Below are positions 19,535-49,310 of a DNA stretch of 64,000 bases, piece after piece. The position numbers and the translations under genes were made by a program. A model generated the notes under the pieces. That model saw only the letters and a program-made list of their open reading frames with translations. It made no database searches and was not told the DNA's origin. The stretch covers positions 124,001-188,000 of the IMG/VR virus record IMGVR_UViG_3300032562_000004, one strand, 5' to 3'. Positions within the stretch are counted from its first letter, which is position 1. Every line of letters starts with the position of its first letter.

Positions 19535-19599
19535 ATCTCCTTTTGTTTACGGTCGTTACTCTGACCTTGGACCCAAGTACTTCTGACTTTGTGATAGGG

Positions 19600-19935
19600 T
19601 TTGTGGAACGATTGTTTCTGTTGCCAAGTACAATCGCTGGAAAACTCCGACAGGTGTTTAGGCTGCCAGTGCGTAACTTTCATCGTTAGCGTTTAATTTA
19701 ATTTGCTTCTTCGACCGAGTGTCCTCAATCCTAACGGCTTTCGCTTTGCCGATTCTCCATTGTTCTAATTATTGCCATGTCGAAACCGGTCGCCCACATC
19801 AAAAACATATTAGCTGGTAATACTCACTCCATTAAAAACCTGCCGTTGTGACTGGTTCACTAATATGCTTATGGTGTAGGCGGGGAGAATCGAACTCCCG
19901 TCCACAACAACTTTCAAACAACTTCAACGAATGTG
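19600..19935 (-). ncRNA. ssrA: Circularly permuted (two-piece) tmRNA, tag ANDESYALAA (outer ends approximate)
   Basis: T-arm + CGCCTACACCA (ends 19872), a 74-nt intervening segment, then GTGGGCGACCGGTTTCGAC (G1=19797); G3.U70; tag frame 19690-19658. Confidence 0.92.
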
Positions 19936-20052
19936 TATCAATAATGGTCCTAATCTATAACTAGTATAAACATCGCCATTATTAAATCTAACTTGGCCCC
20001 AATGAAAAATTCCACCACGGTACCAATGTGTCTTATATACTCTAATCTTCAT
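19924..20052 (-). CDS. 42 aa hypothetical protein
   Basis: Own translation MKIRVYKTHWYRGGIFHWGQ...; co-oriented, fills the gap. Confidence 0.35.
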   Translation of the reverse strand: MKIRVYKTHWYRGGIFHWGQVRFNNGDVYTSYRLGPLLIHIR

Positions 20053-38897: not shown

Positions 38898-38959
38898 ATT
38901 ATGCTCCTTTCTCTAAGTTAATAAAACATTATACTATAAAAGTATTTTTTTGTCAATTC

Positions 38960-40433: not shown

Positions 40434-40447
40434 ACCTAATATGTCTA

Positions 40448-40523
40448 TGGTGCACCCTCTTGGTTACGCTCCAAGCCATCCAGCTCTTAGAGCTGGCGCT
40501 TCCACTAGGTTAGCTTAGGGTGC
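40448..40523 (-). tRNA. Atypical class I tRNA, anticodon TAA (loop TCTAAGA)
   Basis: Perfect acceptor stem + CCA; C at position 33; T-loop AGCGTAA; short variable loop. Confidence 0.65.
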
Positions 40524-40739
40524 TCTACCTCTTGATATCCAACCATCATAGTTGTCGACATCTTTTACTTCGTCTACTCCTAGTTTACTCGTGCAGTTAG
40601 GATTTTCACTACACATCGTAACAAAGGTATGTCCAAGGCTACGATGGAATTGAGACGCAGATAATGCCATACTTAAATCATCAAACACTTCTGCGTGTGG
40701 TTTATTATCCACAGTATAATAAACTTTAAACATATTCAC
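40515..40739 (-). CDS. Hypothetical protein; stop codon inside the next tRNA
   Basis: FVTMCSENPNCTSKLGVD motif. Confidence 0.55.
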   Translation of the reverse strand: MNMFKVYYTVDNKPHAEVFDDLSMALSASQFHRSLGHTFVTMCSENPNCTSKLGVDEVKDVDNYDGWISRGRAP

Positions 40740-40749
40740 TTTCTAAAAT

Positions 40750-40823
40750 TGGTACCTCGTGATGGTGTCGAACCACCGAGACCCACTTGTAAGGAGGGCA
40801 GTATACCGTTTACTTAACGAGGC
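40750..40823 (-). tRNA. tRNA-Val(TAC)
   Basis: Loop CTTACAA, CCA. Confidence 0.88.
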
Positions 40824-42116: not shown

Positions 42117-42190
42117 TGGAGCGGGATAAGAGAATCGAACTCTTGACCGAAGATTGGAAATCTGCTGTTTTACCATTAAACTAATCCCGC
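42117..42190 (-). tRNA. tRNA-Gly(TCC)
   Basis: Loop TTTCCAA, TCCA end. Confidence 0.9.
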
Positions 42191-42192
42191 AT

Positions 42193-42375
42193 TGGTGTCG
42201 TAACGGCAGGGCCCTTCAGGATGAGTTACGACGTTACTACATTGAGGCATTGCACCGTAGCTTACGCTACCCCCATCAACTGCCTCAAATTTTGTGTAGG
42301 GCTTCCACCTACTCCCACCTCGCTTTAAAGTCTGCGTGTCCAAGACTTAGTTCTATTGCTAGAACTGAAAATGTT
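42193..42375 (-). ncRNA. Multi-hairpin RNA ending in an 8-bp stem + ACCA; not a cloverleaf
   Basis: Five hairpins; GTCGTAAC/GTTACGAC-ACCA. Confidence 0.55.
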
Positions 42376-42389
42376 ACTTTCTAATACTT

Positions 42390-42415
42390 TGGTACCTCGG
42401 GCCGGAATCGAACCG
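42390..42415 (-). pseudogene. Orphan 3' fragment (T-arm + acceptor strand) of a tRNA, probably Leu
   Basis: CGGTTCGATTCCGGCCCGAGGTACCA with no 5' half. Confidence 0.75.
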
Positions 42416-42427
42416 TTCGCGTTATAT

Positions 42428-42513
42428 TGGTGCCCGGAGCCGGACTCGAACCGGCATGCCTTTTAAAGCGGAAGATTTTAAGTCTTCTATGTATACCATT
42501 TCATCACCCGGGC
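42428..42513 (-). tRNA. tRNA-Leu(TAA)
   Basis: GAAGA-CTTAAAA-TCTTC, long variable arm. Confidence 0.92.
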
Positions 42514-42968
42514 GTTTGATCTATCTTGCGCCAACCTTTAGGTTTACCACCTTTTCTGTTAGCGGCAATTTTTGCCTTATGTTCTTCCGACTTTGGTTTT
42601 CCTTTATTTCCAGATCCATTAGTATTACCTAACATTACTTTGCTATTCATAGCAGATGCTTTTTCTAAACCATATTTTTCAACACGGCGTTCAAAAGGAT
42701 TTTTATGTGTCCCAAACTCTTTACCATCAATGATGATATTATCGTAATCAGTGCCCCAATACAAATGTTTTGGATTACTACATTTACTATTATTACAAGC
42801 ATGACACAACAGTATGCGCCCGCTTGGAATAGTTGTATCTAAATATTGTGCTAATACACCTTTATGATTAGTAGAGTTACCGCCGCGTTCACAACAAGGC
42901 TCGGATAAGTCTAAGTGAGCCCTGCGTTCTTCGCGAGATTTTTTAATAAATTCTTCTACTATAATCAT
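42504..42968 (-). CDS. HNH-type endonuclease with NUMOD3-like tail (start at MIIVEE)
   Basis: LCHACNNSKCSNPKHLYWGT..DN; GKPKSEEHKAKIA. Confidence 0.78.
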   Translation of the reverse strand: MIIVEEFIKKSREERRAHLDLSEPCCERGGNSTNHKGVLAQYLDTTIPSGRILLCHACNNSKCSNPKHLYWGTDYDNIIIDGKEFGTHKNPFERRVEKYGLEKASAMNSKVMLGNTNGSGNKGKPKSEEHKAKIAANRKGGKPKGWRKIDQTPG

Positions 42969-43009
42969 AACAGTATTATATAGTAATAATTTATTACTGT
43001 CAAATATTT

Positions 43010-43834: not shown

Positions 43835-43929
43835 TGGTAGTAGATATAGGTTATGATCCTATCCGTTGCAGCCCATCTGACCACTCTCCCAGGTTTATAA
43901 AACCCGGCCGCACACCAGTGCTATCTACC
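43835..43929 (-). tRNA. Atypical 95-nt tRNA, anticodon TAT (reads Ile AUA)
   Basis: 7-bp acceptor + ACCA; 4-nt D-loop; loop TTTATAA; long variable arm; T-loop ATCATAA. Confidence 0.7.
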
Positions 43930-44026: not shown

Positions 44027-44035
44027 TTAATTGTT

Positions 44036-44130
44036 TGGCGGAAGACAGAGGAGTCGAACCCCACCCGGCTCTTCACCAGGACCTGGTTTTCAAGGCCAGT
44101 CGCAGGACCATCCCCGCTGCATTATCTTCC
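44036..44130 (-). tRNA. tRNA-Ser(TGA) with enlarged D-arm
   Basis: Loop CTTGAAA, G73, long variable arm. Confidence 0.85.
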
Positions 44131-44136
44131 ATATTG

Positions 44137-45022: not shown

Positions 45023-45027
45023 TTTGT

Positions 45028-45101
45028 TGGTTGCGGGCTAGGGTAACGCTCCCTATTCCATCCTGGCTTATGAGACCGGAGTGTGGCTATCACAACCCGC
45101 A
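45028..45101 (-). tRNA. Initiator-like tRNA-Met(CAT) with short D-arm
   Basis: GCGGG acceptor, loop CTCATAA, T-loop AGCGTTA. Confidence 0.7.
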
Positions 45102-45109
45102 ATAGTTGT

Positions 45110-45950: not shown

Positions 45951-45979
45951 ATTATAATGCTTAATTAATTCTTTGTCAA
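45951..45979 (-). promoter_or_regulatory. Consensus sigma70 promoter of the leader peptide
   Basis: TTGACA-17 nt-TATAAT. Confidence 0.85.
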
Positions 45980-48616: not shown

Positions 48617-48736
48617 ACTAATAGTTCCTTTATGTTTATACTACTGAACAAATATTTATTGTTTTTTTGCGTTGGCCTGCAAAAATTGCTAGGTTTTGGC
48701 ATATTTTTAAGTTTAATATACGCATATAATGAAGTC

Positions 48737-48764
48737 AAAAGAATAGGGGTCGAAGCCCCTATCT
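48737..48764 (-). terminator. Terminator at the end of the tmRNA coding piece
   Basis: ATAGGGGC-TTCG-ACCCCTAT-TCTTTT. Confidence 0.8.
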
Positions 48765-49097
48765 GTTATTTTCTGTTTCGACGGATAACTCCGCAAAGCA
48801 GTGATTAAACTGCTAATGTTTGGCGTTGTGCTGTACGAGCAGAGAAACGAATTCCCTTACCTGAAACAGTTACTTCGCCTTTAGATGCGTTTGCATTTAA
48901 GTTTTTCGCTTGATTTACAGTCATCGCCTACTGTGTTGCCTCTTTCATTATCTCACCATGTCGAAACCTTGTCATCCCCACTGAAACATACTACAGCTTT
49001 TGGCCTCGCTACCGATAACTCGGTTCGGTAATATGCTTCGGTGGAGATGCCGGGAATCGAACCCGGGTCCACAGCGCCTTCACTACGAAGGAATTAC
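48765..49097 (-). ncRNA. ssrA: Second circularly permuted tmRNA, 29-aa tag ANASKGEVTVSGKGIRFSARTAQRQTLAV (outer ends approximate)
   Basis: GGACCCGGGTTCGATTCCCGGCATCTCCACC, an intervening segment, then GGGGATGACAAGGTTTCGAC (G1=48979); G3.U70; tag frame 48894-48805. Confidence 0.9.
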
Positions 49098-49106
49098 AAC
49101 AATTCT

Positions 49107-49310
49107 TTACAGCGGAAGAATATTTGATGCTTGCTTGCCTTTAGGGCCTGCCACTACATCGAATGTTACCGCTTGATTCTCTTTTAAACTCTTAAAACCA
49201 TTTGTGCTAATTGCGGAAAAATGTGCAAACAATTCCTCACCACCAGCATCGGGGGTAATAAATCCAAACCCTTTTGCATCATTAAACCACTTTACTTTAC
49301 CTGTTGCCAT
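49107..49310 (-). CDS. cspA: Cold-shock protein
   Basis: [18 protein letters not shown]...FAHFSAI...[10 protein letters not shown]. Confidence 0.95.

What the first reader, a model, noticed from the sequence alone, without database searches (positions are those of the whole stretch)
42193..42375. About 180-nt multi-hairpin RNA ending in a minihelix with ACCA
The minus strand has hairpins AGTTCTA/TAGAACT, AAGTCT/AGACTT, GTAGG/CCTAC and TTGAGGCA/TGCCTCAA, a possible ACATT/AATGT closing helix, and finally GTCGTAAC...GTTACGAC-ACCA, ending 2 nt before tRNA-Gly like a tRNA unit. It lacks D, anticodon and T arms. It may be a tRNA mimic or decoy, or a new ncRNA matured by tRNA enzymes.
Basis: partly seen in the sequence, partly recalled or inferred. 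Interest (0 to 1): 0.65.

Follow-up and report, generated by a model that had tools for sequence, protein, structure and literature searches.

The report
Conserved phage RNA motif in mosaic spacer
The flagged 180 bases are not one tRNA-like gene but a patchwork spacer in a lake phage's tRNA cluster, and its middle 57 bases are a copy of a widespread, phage-only folded RNA that is in no RNA family database and has no known function.

Summary
They do not form one conserved RNA.

The 237-nt spacer (42191-42427, minus strand) is missing from the closest diverged relative, where tRNA-Leu and tRNA-Gly are 17 nt apart. All other carriers are identical copies of the same lake phage.

The spacer is a mosaic of four parts:
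- a dead 3' piece of a tRNA-Val-like gene with its flank
- a GCAA hairpin
- a 57-59-nt motif (42291-42349)
- a private hairpin and the ACCA minihelix, which have no relatives anywhere

- It has over 100 distinct copies in very different phages, including cultured Pseudomonas phages D3 and PAJU2.
- There is one copy per locus.
- Both stems covary, and one tertiary pair covaries.
- It matches no Rfam family.
- A pattern that recovers 102 of 107 known copies finds 1 hit in 185,579 bacterial species genomes.

Elsewhere it sits at transcript starts, in the Q-to-lysis leader, or between tRNAs.

Its function is unknown. My best guess, at low confidence, is a self-contained module that presents two T-loops and docks on a conserved host partner, possibly the tRNA elbow. 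The tRNA-mimic reading of the whole unit is not supported, and expression is untested.

The parts
42975..43003 (-). Perfect sigma-70 consensus promoter (TTGACA-17-TATAAT). It probably starts the transcript that carries the HNH-like ORF, tRNA-Leu(taa), the spacer and tRNA-Gly.
   Evidence: A consensus match only; transcription was not shown.
42428..42513 (-). tRNA-Leu(taa), the upstream neighbour.
42390..42420 (-). Dead tRNA 3' fragment (T arm, 3' acceptor strand and ACCA) with no 5' half.
   Evidence: Sequence. Together with the next ~25 nt it aligns to the 3' end of tRNA-Val(tac) at 40750-40823 plus that gene's 3' flank (CGAGGTACCAA and TTAGAAAGT are shared).
42349..42366 (-). Hairpin H1 (7 bp, GCAA tetraloop), lineage-specific.
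   Evidence: L131 has an analogous CCTATA-GCAA-TATAGG hairpin just upstream of its motif copy. There is no alignment-level support.
42291..42349 (-). Copy of the conserved phage RNA motif. H2 is a 5-bp stem with a UGGACACGC loop. The linker is UUAAAGCGAGGUGGG. H3 is a T-arm-like hairpin with a G:C closing pair and a UGGAAGC loop.
   Evidence: Covariance model R1 scores 80.4 bits, E 1.5e-19, and this is the only hit in the window.
42242..42288 (-). Hairpin H4 (8-bp outer stem, inner GUAGC-GUAA-GCUAC hairpin), private to this phage.
   Evidence: nhmmer finds no relative in 2.2 Mb of related loci. A 22-mer from it occurs in metagenome contigs only in the same three contigs of this phage.
42193..42232 (-). 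8-bp hairpin with a 20-nt loop followed by ACCA, ending 2 nt before tRNA-Gly. It may be a relic acceptor stem or a processing signal. It is not conserved.
   Evidence: z -2.15; only identical copies; no tRNA with this acceptor stem in any locus; chance estimate.
42117..42190 (-). tRNA-Gly(tcc), the downstream neighbour. RNase P cleavage at its 5' end would set the 3' boundary of the spacer RNA.
   Evidence: The cleavage is an inference.

Best explanation
The interval is part of a 237-nt non-coding spacer between tRNA-Leu(taa) and tRNA-Gly(tcc) in the tRNA and homing-endonuclease array of a large lake phage. It is a recombination mosaic, not one designed RNA.

From 5' to 3' it holds:
- a truncated tRNA-Val-like 3' end with its flank
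- a GNRA hairpin
- an intact copy of a ~57-nt structured RNA module that is widespread in, and almost restricted to, phages
- a private hairpin and a hairpin ending in ACCA

Shown:
- The module is a real RNA structure: two covarying stems, a covarying loop-to-linker pair, and an invariant CAC/GUG pair of segments that could form a pseudoknot.
- It occurs once per locus.
- It is portable between contexts.

Inferred:
- The spacer is transcribed with the tRNAs.
- RNase P cutting at tRNA-Gly, followed by exonuclease trimming, leaves an end at or near ACCA.
- Only the module is under selection.

Most likely mechanism (about 0.25 on its own): the module folds into a compact knot that presents two T-loop pentads, AGNGA in the linker and UGGAA in the H3 loop. 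[quoted passage not shown] On this reading it works as a self-contained docking module for a conserved host partner, tRNA being the best candidate, whether it sits at a transcript's 5' end, at its 3' end, or is excised from a tRNA precursor.
For: Mosaic and indel:
- L007 (96% identity in the neighbouring protein) has tRNA-Leu(taa), a 17-nt spacer, then tRNA-Gly.
- Seven other loci are base-identical.
- The 5' part is a paralogue of the tRNA-Val 3' end and its flank.
- H4 and the minihelix have no relatives.

The module:
- nhmmer hit in L021.
- The exact H2 17-mer occurs in more than 120 viral contigs.
- 107 distinct copies were aligned.
- Outer H2 pair: CG 43, AU 35, UA 15, GC 3. Five H3 pairs have changes on both sides.
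- Tertiary pair G36:C51 is paired in 100% of copies, switching to A:U twice and C:G twice.
- 0 of 500 shuffles reach the observed covariation. RNAalifold agrees and mutual information agrees.
- One copy in the window and one per locus in 163 loci.
- No Rfam family at E<=10 for the window copy or the D3 copy.
- 1 hit in 185,579 species genomes, with a pattern that recovers 102 of 107 copies. No E. coli genome holds it.

Context independence:
- A -10 box ends 5 nt upstream in 16 of 117 copies, and T4-type TATAAATA ends 4 nt upstream in 6.
- It lies between the Q-like gene and the lysis genes in PAJU2 and D3.
- It lies within 400 nt of a tRNA in 21 of 119 copies.
- In L141, H3 is followed directly by U7.
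- No protein family is shared by more than 19 of 119 loci.

T-loop signature:
- A27, G28 and A31, and U45, G46 and A49, are 93-100% conserved, while the third position of the first pentad varies.
- This matches the 'AG..A and UG..A' core and the 'AG-box/GNUG-box' described in PMC3664808.
Against: - No transcript evidence. The RNA-library runs held only contigs, and these covered the flanking tRNAs but not the spacer.
- The double T-loop reading rests on short sequence signatures. About 10% of copies deviate at A27 or G28.
- The CAC:GUG pseudoknot is invariant, so covariation cannot test it.
- A helix that would turn AGNGA into a true bulge is not supported by the variation at columns 23-24 (my reading).
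- The T-box, RNase P and LSU rRNA models do not hit. Model R1 does not significantly hit the E. coli L1 stalk.
- Only 18% of copies lie near tRNAs.
- The closest relative does without the spacer, so in this phage it may be dispensable.
Confidence: 0.6

Rival explanations
1. The whole ~180-nt unit is one RNA gene: a tRNA mimic or decoy whose ACCA-ended minihelix is recognised by RNase P, the CCA-adding enzyme or an aminoacyl-tRNA synthetase, or which distracts a tRNA-directed nuclease.
For: - A perfect 8-bp stem plus ACCA lies 2 nt before the next tRNA, within the 1-10 nt spacing seen between other tRNAs of this array.
- A stem followed by NCCA appears in only 0.15% of shuffles of the spacer.
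- Every tRNA in the array encodes CCA.
- The array holds other odd tRNA-like units ending in ACCA.
- T4 has stable non-tRNA RNAs in the same kind of place.
Against: - No conservation. Only identical copies exist, and the unit is absent from L007.
- No tRNA-model hit.
- The loop has no T-loop sequence.
- The stem is 8 bp, whereas the acceptor and T stems of a tRNA stack to 12 bp.
- Similar stem-plus-NCCA cases occur by chance inside coding sequence in the same window.
- The putative closing helix uses a strand that is homologous to a tRNA-Val flank.
- The conserved core occurs elsewhere without any minihelix.
Confidence: 0.12
2. The conserved motif is a cis-acting leader that acts on the transcribing RNA polymerase or on the 5' end of the transcript. 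It would be either a put-like processive antiterminator or a 5'-terminal stabiliser. It would serve the operon downstream and have nothing to do with tRNA.
For: - It starts at or next to +1 behind -10 boxes and T4-type late promoters.
- In PAJU2 it lies 55 nt after a TTGACC-17-TAGGAT promoter and about 130 nt before two tandem intrinsic terminators that precede the lysis genes. D3 and Marin are similar.
- Elsewhere it heads operons that begin with terminase, helicase or small repressor-like genes.
- No partner protein is conserved, and there is a single copy per locus.
Against: - HK022, the put prototype, has no copy, so the motif is not homologous to put.
- Terminators are not enriched downstream (15 of 115 against 11 of 107 upstream).
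- In tRNA arrays, RNase P would cut the tether to the polymerase.
- In L141 the H3 hairpin is itself followed by U7 and would terminate transcription.
- In the window the motif sits about 600 nt from the nearest promoter, in mid-array.
Confidence: 0.2
3. The motif is a ligand-sensing riboswitch aptamer or a small self-cleaving ribozyme.
For: - A compact, pseudoknot-capable fold of ~57 nt with invariant loop and linker nucleotides and a covarying tertiary pair.
- Its topology (hairpin loop pairing with the linker, followed by a second hairpin) resembles pistol-type or H-type pseudoknot aptamers. This comparison is from memory.
- It often lies 5-40 nt before a start codon.
Against: - No match to any riboswitch or ribozyme family in Rfam at E<=10.
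- It is almost absent from bacterial genomes, which is unusual for metabolite sensors.
- The downstream genes share no metabolic theme.
- No expression platform overlaps the aptamer.
- It begins at +1 in many phages, which leaves nothing for a ribozyme that cuts at its own 5' end to remove.
Confidence: 0.1
4. In this phage the whole spacer, including the motif copy, is a passenger left by recombination or homing-endonuclease-driven gene conversion, and it does nothing here.
For: - It is present or absent between otherwise collinear relatives.
- The same ORF-to-tRNA junction occurs with the motif (L152, L021, L237) and without it (L022, L122).
- Truncated copies exist in L234 and L203.
- HNH genes flank the site, and a dead tRNA fragment lies next to it.
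Against: - The window copy is intact and scores as high as any (80.4 bits).
- The family as a whole is under clear structural selection.
Confidence: 0.25

Closest known systems
Phage T4 stable RNAs C and D (rnaC 'species 1' and rnaD 'species 2')
   Same: These are non-tRNA small RNAs encoded inside a phage tRNA cluster, directly abutting a tRNA, next to a homing-endonuclease gene, with no known function (annotation). The rnaD sequence runs into ...GCGCACC followed by A in the DNA, and rnaC carries a T-arm-like CCGGG-UUCGAAU-CCCGG. Like the window's spacer, they look as if they are matured by the tRNA-processing machinery.
   Different: There is no sequence or structure relationship. Model R1 finds nothing in the T4 cluster. 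The window's unit has no canonical T arm, and its only conserved part occurs mostly outside tRNA clusters.
[quoted passage not shown]
   Same: The sequence signature matches: one AG..A pentad and one UG..A pentad, the latter preceded by GN ('GNUG-box'), all highly conserved (PMC3664808; column frequencies). The second pentad sits in a 7-nt loop closed by G:C, as in a tRNA T arm.
   Different: The connectivity differs. The first pentad lies in a linker between a hairpin and a putative pseudoknot, not in a bulge or junction. The Rfam T-box, RNase P and rRNA models do not hit. The 3D fold and tRNA binding are untested.
HK022 put RNA and other processive-antitermination RNAs
   Same: Both are short, two-hairpin, phage-encoded elements placed soon after a promoter and upstream of terminators, and both work without a dedicated adjacent protein gene. 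The properties of put are from established knowledge and PMC9378689, listed.
   Different: It is not homologous: there is no R1 hit in the whole HK022 genome. It also occurs inside tRNA arrays and as a probable stand-alone RNA, and terminators are not generally enriched downstream.
tRNA acceptor/T minihelix substrates
   Same: A stem directly followed by ACCA, placed like the 3' end of a tRNA gene.
   Different: The stem is 8 bp, not 12, with a 20-nt loop that has no T-loop sequence. It is not conserved, and the tRNA model does not match.
Candidate structured RNAs mined from IMG/VR (Fremin, Bhatt and Kyrpides 2023, PMC10690425)
   Same: That study used the same source collection and the same kind of object: ~65-nt covarying intergenic motifs in phages, some tRNA-like and some upstream of genes. 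The motif may well be one of their 8,495 unnamed 'DNAVirus_X' entries.
   Different: This could not be checked, because the supplementary files are not held. The main text does not describe this motif.

Membership tests
tRNA (Rfam RF00005) | Cloverleaf with D, anticodon and T arms that scores above the family threshold. | tested here: not met
   ARAGORN calls nothing in 42191-42427. cmscan at E<=10 reports only the two flanking tRNAs.
tRNA-like minihelix / RNase P model substrate | An acceptor-type stem directly followed by an unpaired RCCA 3' end. | tested here: met
   GTCGTAAC/GTTACGAC followed by ACCA at 42193-42232. This is a sequence-level test only.
tRNA-like minihelix / RNase P model substrate | About 12 bp of coaxial acceptor and T stem, capped by a T-loop. 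| tested here: not met
   The stem is 8 bp, and the 20-nt loop UCAUCCUGAAGGGCCCUGCC has no T-loop motif.
tRNA-like minihelix / RNase P model substrate | Cleavage by RNase P, CCA repair, or aminoacylation. | not testable with these tools
   This needs enzymology or RACE. The public RNA runs gave contigs only, with no ends.
tmRNA (one-piece or permuted) | A tRNA-like domain with G:U alanine identity, plus a tag reading frame. | tested here: not met
   The two tmRNA genes of the window lie elsewhere, and no tmRNA model hits the spacer. The fragment ends in GAGGUACCA, not UCCACCA.
Conserved phage motif defined here (model R1) | H2 stem with UGGACACGC loop, UUAAAGYGA-N-GUGGG linker, H3 hairpin with UGGAANC loop, and the G36:C51 pair. 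| tested here: met
   80.4 bits, E 1.5e-19, full length, all features present.
[quoted passage not shown] | Two pentads, AG..A and UG..A, with the six core residues conserved. | tested here: met
   A27 in 104 of 107 copies, G28 in 99, A31 in 107; U45 in 106, G46 in 107, A49 in 107. The definition is from PMC3664808.
[quoted passage not shown] | The two T-loops interdigitate in 3D and form a stacking platform that binds the tRNA elbow. | not testable with these tools
   No RNA 3D prediction or binding assay is available. The residues that would form the platform (A25, G47) are invariant, so covariation cannot test them.
T-box riboswitch (RF00230) | Stem I with specifier loop, and an antiterminator with a UGGN bulge. 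| tested here: not met
   No T-box hit at E<=10. The motif is 57 nt, with no specifier loop and no competing terminator.
HK022 put-type antiterminator RNA | Homology to putL or putR. | tested here: not met
   R1 run with filters off over the whole HK022 genome gives a best hit of 8.5 bits, E 0.84.
HK022 put-type antiterminator RNA | Promotes read-through of downstream terminators in cis. | not testable with these tools
   The layout in PAJU2 fits, but there is no general enrichment of terminators.
T4 rnaC / rnaD | Sequence or structure similarity to the T4 stable RNAs. | tested here: not met
   No R1 hit in the T4 tRNA cluster. The folds are different.

The most novel reading that the evidence does not exclude
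[quoted passage not shown] It would be a free-standing, phage-only RNA that stacks on the tRNA elbow and lets phages bind, sense or shield tRNAs or pre-tRNAs. This could serve to time late genes to the state of the tRNA pool, or to counter defences that attack tRNA. It would act from transcript leaders, or as a small RNA excised from tRNA clusters.
Probability: 0.15. Interest if true: 0.85.

Novelty: categorically new. Interest (0 to 1): 0.62.

Why it matters
The check nevertheless uncovered a small RNA fold that very different phages keep as a single copy: lake jumbo and T4-like phages, and temperate Pseudomonas aeruginosa phages such as D3 and PAJU2.

- Its loops are nearly invariant and it has a covarying tertiary contact.
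- It is in no RNA family database.
- Bacteria themselves almost never carry it.

An element of this kind most likely contacts something universal in the host, such as tRNA, RNA polymerase, the ribosome or a nuclease. Because it occurs in cultured, genetically tractable Pseudomonas phages, its function can be tested directly.

[quoted passage not shown] If it modifies transcription it would be a new class of antiterminator or leader RNA. It also shows that D3 orf86 and similar 'hypothetical protein' calls over this site are probably mis-annotations.

Tried and rejected
- Rfam at gathering thresholds over the whole window, and at E<=10 over the spacer and over the D3 copy: only tRNAs and tmRNAs.
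- blastn for paralogues of the spacer in the window and loci: none.
- nhmmer with the tRNA-fragment+H1 part and with the H4+minihelix part against 2.2 Mb of related loci: only T arms of tRNAs, and nothing for H4 or the minihelix.
- Search for any tRNA with the acceptor pair GTCGTAA/TTACGAC: none.
- Local alignment of H4 and the minihelix against the rest of the tRNA array: the best match is tRNA-Val, but the score (35) is within the shuffle range of 32 +/- 4, maximum 44. Treated as not significant.
- Permuted tRNA or permuted tmRNA reading of the upstream tRNA fragment: no complementary 5' acceptor strand (ACCTCGG) is nearby, and there is no alanine identity. Rejected.
- Twister, pistol and HDV-like ribozyme topologies, compared by hand from memory: the order of strands does not fit twister or HDV, and the Rfam pistol model does not hit. 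Rejected as family membership.
- Similarity to the E. coli 23S L1 stalk (GGUGGGAGGC, UGGACGCCAG): R1 gives 3.5 bits. Superficial.
- Salmonella phage 9NA hit: only the H3 half matches, and H2 and the linker differ. Left as a possible distant or partial relative.
- Enrichment of terminators after the motif: none.
- A protein gene shared by all motif loci: none, with at most 19 of 119 loci sharing one.
- Public reads: the RNA-library runs hold only the tRNAs. Two runs of doubtful RNA status hold the motif region from relatives. All are contigs, so they show no ends and no expression evidence.
- Literature: sequence-string and keyword searches found no description of the motif. The supplements of the IMG/VR structured-RNA catalogue are not held.

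Full report
**Setting.** The window is AT-rich (about 36% GC). It matches lake-water viral contigs of up to 235 kb. On the minus strand between 38.9 and 45.3 kb it carries an array of some 25 tRNA genes, interspersed with HNH-type and other small ORFs. There are also two permuted tmRNA genes elsewhere. The finding lies between tRNA-Leu(taa) (42428-42513) and tRNA-Gly(tcc) (42117-42190).

**The observation.** The last one, GTCGTAAC...GTTACGAC, is followed by ACCA and then by two bases before tRNA-Gly. Neither ARAGORN nor the Rfam tRNA model at E<=10 sees a tRNA there.
- Folding energies are only 1.6-2.2 standard deviations better than shuffles.
- A perfect 8-bp stem followed by NCCA arises in 0.15% of shuffles of the spacer. 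About two per strand occur in the 64-kb window, including in coding sequence. Its position next to a tRNA is therefore suggestive rather than compelling.
- That fragment and the next 25 nt align with the 3' end of tRNA-Val(tac) and its downstream flank, 1.6 kb away.

**Relatives of the phage.** The neighbouring 171-aa protein retrieved eight viral loci.
- Seven are base-for-base identical to the window across the spacer.
- The eighth, L007 (96% protein identity, same tRNA order), has tRNA-Leu(taa), 17 nt, then tRNA-Gly, with no spacer at all.
- A search for the minihelix pattern in viral contigs, and for a 22-mer of H4 in metagenome contigs, returned only contigs of this same phage.
- tRNA-Gly(tcc) itself is shared by more than 120 very different phage contigs, with unrelated upstream sequences.
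- The spacer is therefore an indel private to one genotype. H1, H4 and the minihelix have no comparative support.

**The turn.** nhmmer with the spacer against the fetched loci hit one unrelated contig (L021, E 3.5e-9), over hairpins H2 and H3 only.
Only three of 92 distinct sequences were chance matches in GC-rich genes.
- In the others the 17-mer is followed by UUAAAGCGA-N-GUGGG, then a hairpin whose stem differs from phage to phage while its loop stays UGGAANC.
- A second pattern, anchored on the linker and H3, added copies with changed H2 stems: GUAU/AUAC and GCCU/AGGC.

**Structure of the motif.** On 107 distinct sequences (alignment A3):
- The outer H2 pair is CG 43, AU 35, UA 15, GC 3.
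- Two inner H2 pairs switch on both sides.
- Five H3 pairs have changes on both sides in 10-41 sequences each.
- One pair between the last H3 loop base and a G six bases upstream of the stem is paired in every sequence: G:C 103, A:U 2, C:G 2.
- None of 500 column shuffles, and no slid register, comes close.
- RNAalifold finds the same two stems unaided. Mutual information ranks the same pairs first.
- CAC in the H2 loop and GUG in the linker are invariant and complementary. This allows an H-type pseudoknot that covariation cannot test.
- The motif is therefore a real, compact RNA structure.

**Distribution.**
- A covariance model (R1) finds exactly one copy in the window, at 42291-42349 on the minus strand (80.4 bits, E 1.5e-19).
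- A profile search finds one copy per locus in 163 loci.
- Among cultured phages it occurs in about 48 temperate Pseudomonas aeruginosa phages (D3, PAJU2, PMG1, Ab31 and others), once per genome. It is either not annotated or buried in a 'hypothetical protein' such as D3 orf86.
- It is absent from 5,426 complete E. coli genomes.
- It is present in five phage-sized P. aeruginosa 'plasmids'.
- It was found once in 185,579 species-representative bacterial and archaeal genomes, using a pattern that recovers 102 of 107 known copies.
- Rfam 15 has no family for it. Permissive scans of the window copy and the D3 copy list nothing.
- I found no description in the paper library. It may be one of the thousands of unnamed candidates mined from IMG/VR by Fremin et al., but their lists are not held.

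**Contexts.**
- Of 119 distinct contexts, 21 have a same-strand tRNA within 400 nt, often 5-15 nt downstream and just after another tRNA's CCA. The other 98 have none.
- A -10-like hexamer ends 5 nt before the motif in 16 copies, and the T4-type late promoter TATAAATA ends 4 nt before it in 6. In these phages the transcript starts at the first G of H2.
- The first gene downstream, often only 5-40 nt away, is a LexA-DNA-binding-like small protein, an SNF2 helicase, an Arc-like protein, small or large terminase, or scaffold.
- In PAJU2 the motif lies between the Q-like antiterminator gene and the lysis genes, 55 nt after a TTGACC-17-TAGGAT promoter and about 130 nt before two tandem intrinsic terminators. 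D3 and Marin are similar, with tRNA genes added.
- In L141 the H3 hairpin runs straight into seven U residues, as if the RNA ended there.
- Truncated copies exist in L234 and L203.
- The same ORF-to-tRNA junction occurs with and without the motif.
- No protein family is shared by more than 19 of the 119 loci.
- Terminators are not enriched downstream.
- The module is thus portable and self-contained. It is not tied to a partner gene, a gene class or tRNAs.

**What it might do.** Two features stand out in the column frequencies.
- The H3 loop is a 7-nt loop closed by G:C whose first five bases, UGGAA, fit the T-loop pattern.
- The linker holds AGNGA, with only the middle base free.
- Lehmann et al. 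[quoted passage not shown] This is the module by which the L1 stalk, RNase P and T-box Stem I stack on the tRNA elbow. [quoted passage not shown] The motif has both, with GGUG before the second pentad.
- The covarying G36:C51 contact would bring the linker pentad next to the H3 loop.
- This is a resemblance in sequence signature only. The connectivity differs. About a tenth of copies deviate in the first pentad. The Rfam models of those RNAs do not hit. R1 does not recognise the E. coli L1 stalk.
- I take tRNA-elbow docking as the most specific testable idea, at about 0.15-0.25.
- The main rival is a cis-acting leader (antitermination or 5'-end protection). It fits the promoter-proximal and Q-to-lysis positions. 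It is weakened by the lack of homology to HK022 put, by the tRNA-array and stand-alone contexts, and by the terminator count.
- Riboswitch and ribozyme readings are less likely, for the reasons listed under rivals.

**Back to the finding.**
- The spacer is about 600 nt downstream of a perfect TTGACA-17-TATAAT promoter (43003-42975, minus). No predicted terminator lies between, so it is probably co-transcribed with the tRNAs.
- By the known rules of E. coli-type tRNA maturation, RNase P cutting at G1 of tRNA-Gly would leave ...GACACCAAU. Exonucleases would then trim towards the stem. An ACCA-ended product is therefore plausible whether or not the minihelix has a function.
- The closest known analogues are T4's stable RNAs C and D. 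They sit in the T4 tRNA cluster next to segB and still have no assigned function. They are unrelated in sequence and structure.
- Public RNA libraries could not settle expression. They are kept as contigs and cover only the tRNAs.

**Verdict.** The single tRNA-mimic interpretation is not supported. The interval is a mosaic whose one conserved component is a copy of a widespread, phage-restricted, structurally well-supported RNA module. That module is not in Rfam and has no known function.

Noticed in passing
window 19567-19966 (-) and 48714-49131 (-): The phage window carries two permuted (two-piece type) tmRNA genes. One has the tag ANDESYALAA. The other has a long tag, ANASKGEVTVSGKGIRFSARTAQRQTLAV. 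Both pass Rfam gathering scores. The relative L007 has one with yet another tag.
   Followed up: no
window 40446-40530 (-): An uncalled tRNA-like unit just upstream of tRNA-His. It folds into a clean cloverleaf (z -2.8) and ends in ACCA. Its anticodon arm is a perfect 7-bp palindrome with a UAA triloop (CUCUAAGAG), and its T loop is AGCGUAA instead of TΨC-type.
   Followed up: partly
window 45023-45103 (-) and 44027-44136 (-): Two more units missed by ARAGORN. One is tRNA-like, with a CAT anticodon and an AGCGUUA T loop. The other is a probable tRNA-Ser(tga), which L007 has as a called gene at the equivalent place.
   Followed up: partly
window 43835-43929 (-): The 95-nt 'tRNA-Ile(tat)' call has a long extra arm and a non-canonical T loop (AUCAUAA). 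The same odd gene is present in L007.
   Followed up: no
window 45951-45979, 42975-43003, 38928-38956 (-): Three perfect 12-of-12 sigma-70 consensus promoters (TTGACA-17-TATAAT) lie inside the tRNA array, each placed just after a tRNA and before an ORF. This suggests several strong internal transcription starts.
   Followed up: no
window 42504-42968 (-) and L007 9349-9810: The ORF upstream of tRNA-Leu(taa) matches no Pfam family, but it carries a Cys/His-rich stretch (CHACNNSKCSNPKHLYWG) typical of HNH-like homing endonucleases. Its C-terminal half and the adjoining tRNA-Leu differ strongly between the window and L007, as expected after gene conversion.
   Followed up: partly
L283 (phage D3) 2959-3273; similar calls in PMG1, Fyn8, FBPa19: The 'hypothetical protein' ORFs annotated over the conserved RNA motif (for example D3 orf86) are probably spurious, because the site is a covarying RNA structure.
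   Followed up: partly
L140, L144, L172, L188, L210 (about 10-90 nt after the motif): In a group of phages with T4-type late promoters, the motif is followed by a second conserved non-coding stretch (AACAAAAGGAGAACGCACC...GCUCUGCU..UUAAGGGUGAUGCCUCA). Another group (L145, L181, L184, L212, L259) has a long conserved hairpin after it. These may be further RNA elements.
   Followed up: no
L286 (Salmonella phage 9NA) 2480-2545: Between the head genes gp41 and gp42 there is a sequence identical to the window's H3 hairpin (GGGAGUAGGUGGAAGCCCUACAC), preceded by a different 5' half. It may be a distant variant or a recombinant of the motif.
   Followed up: partly
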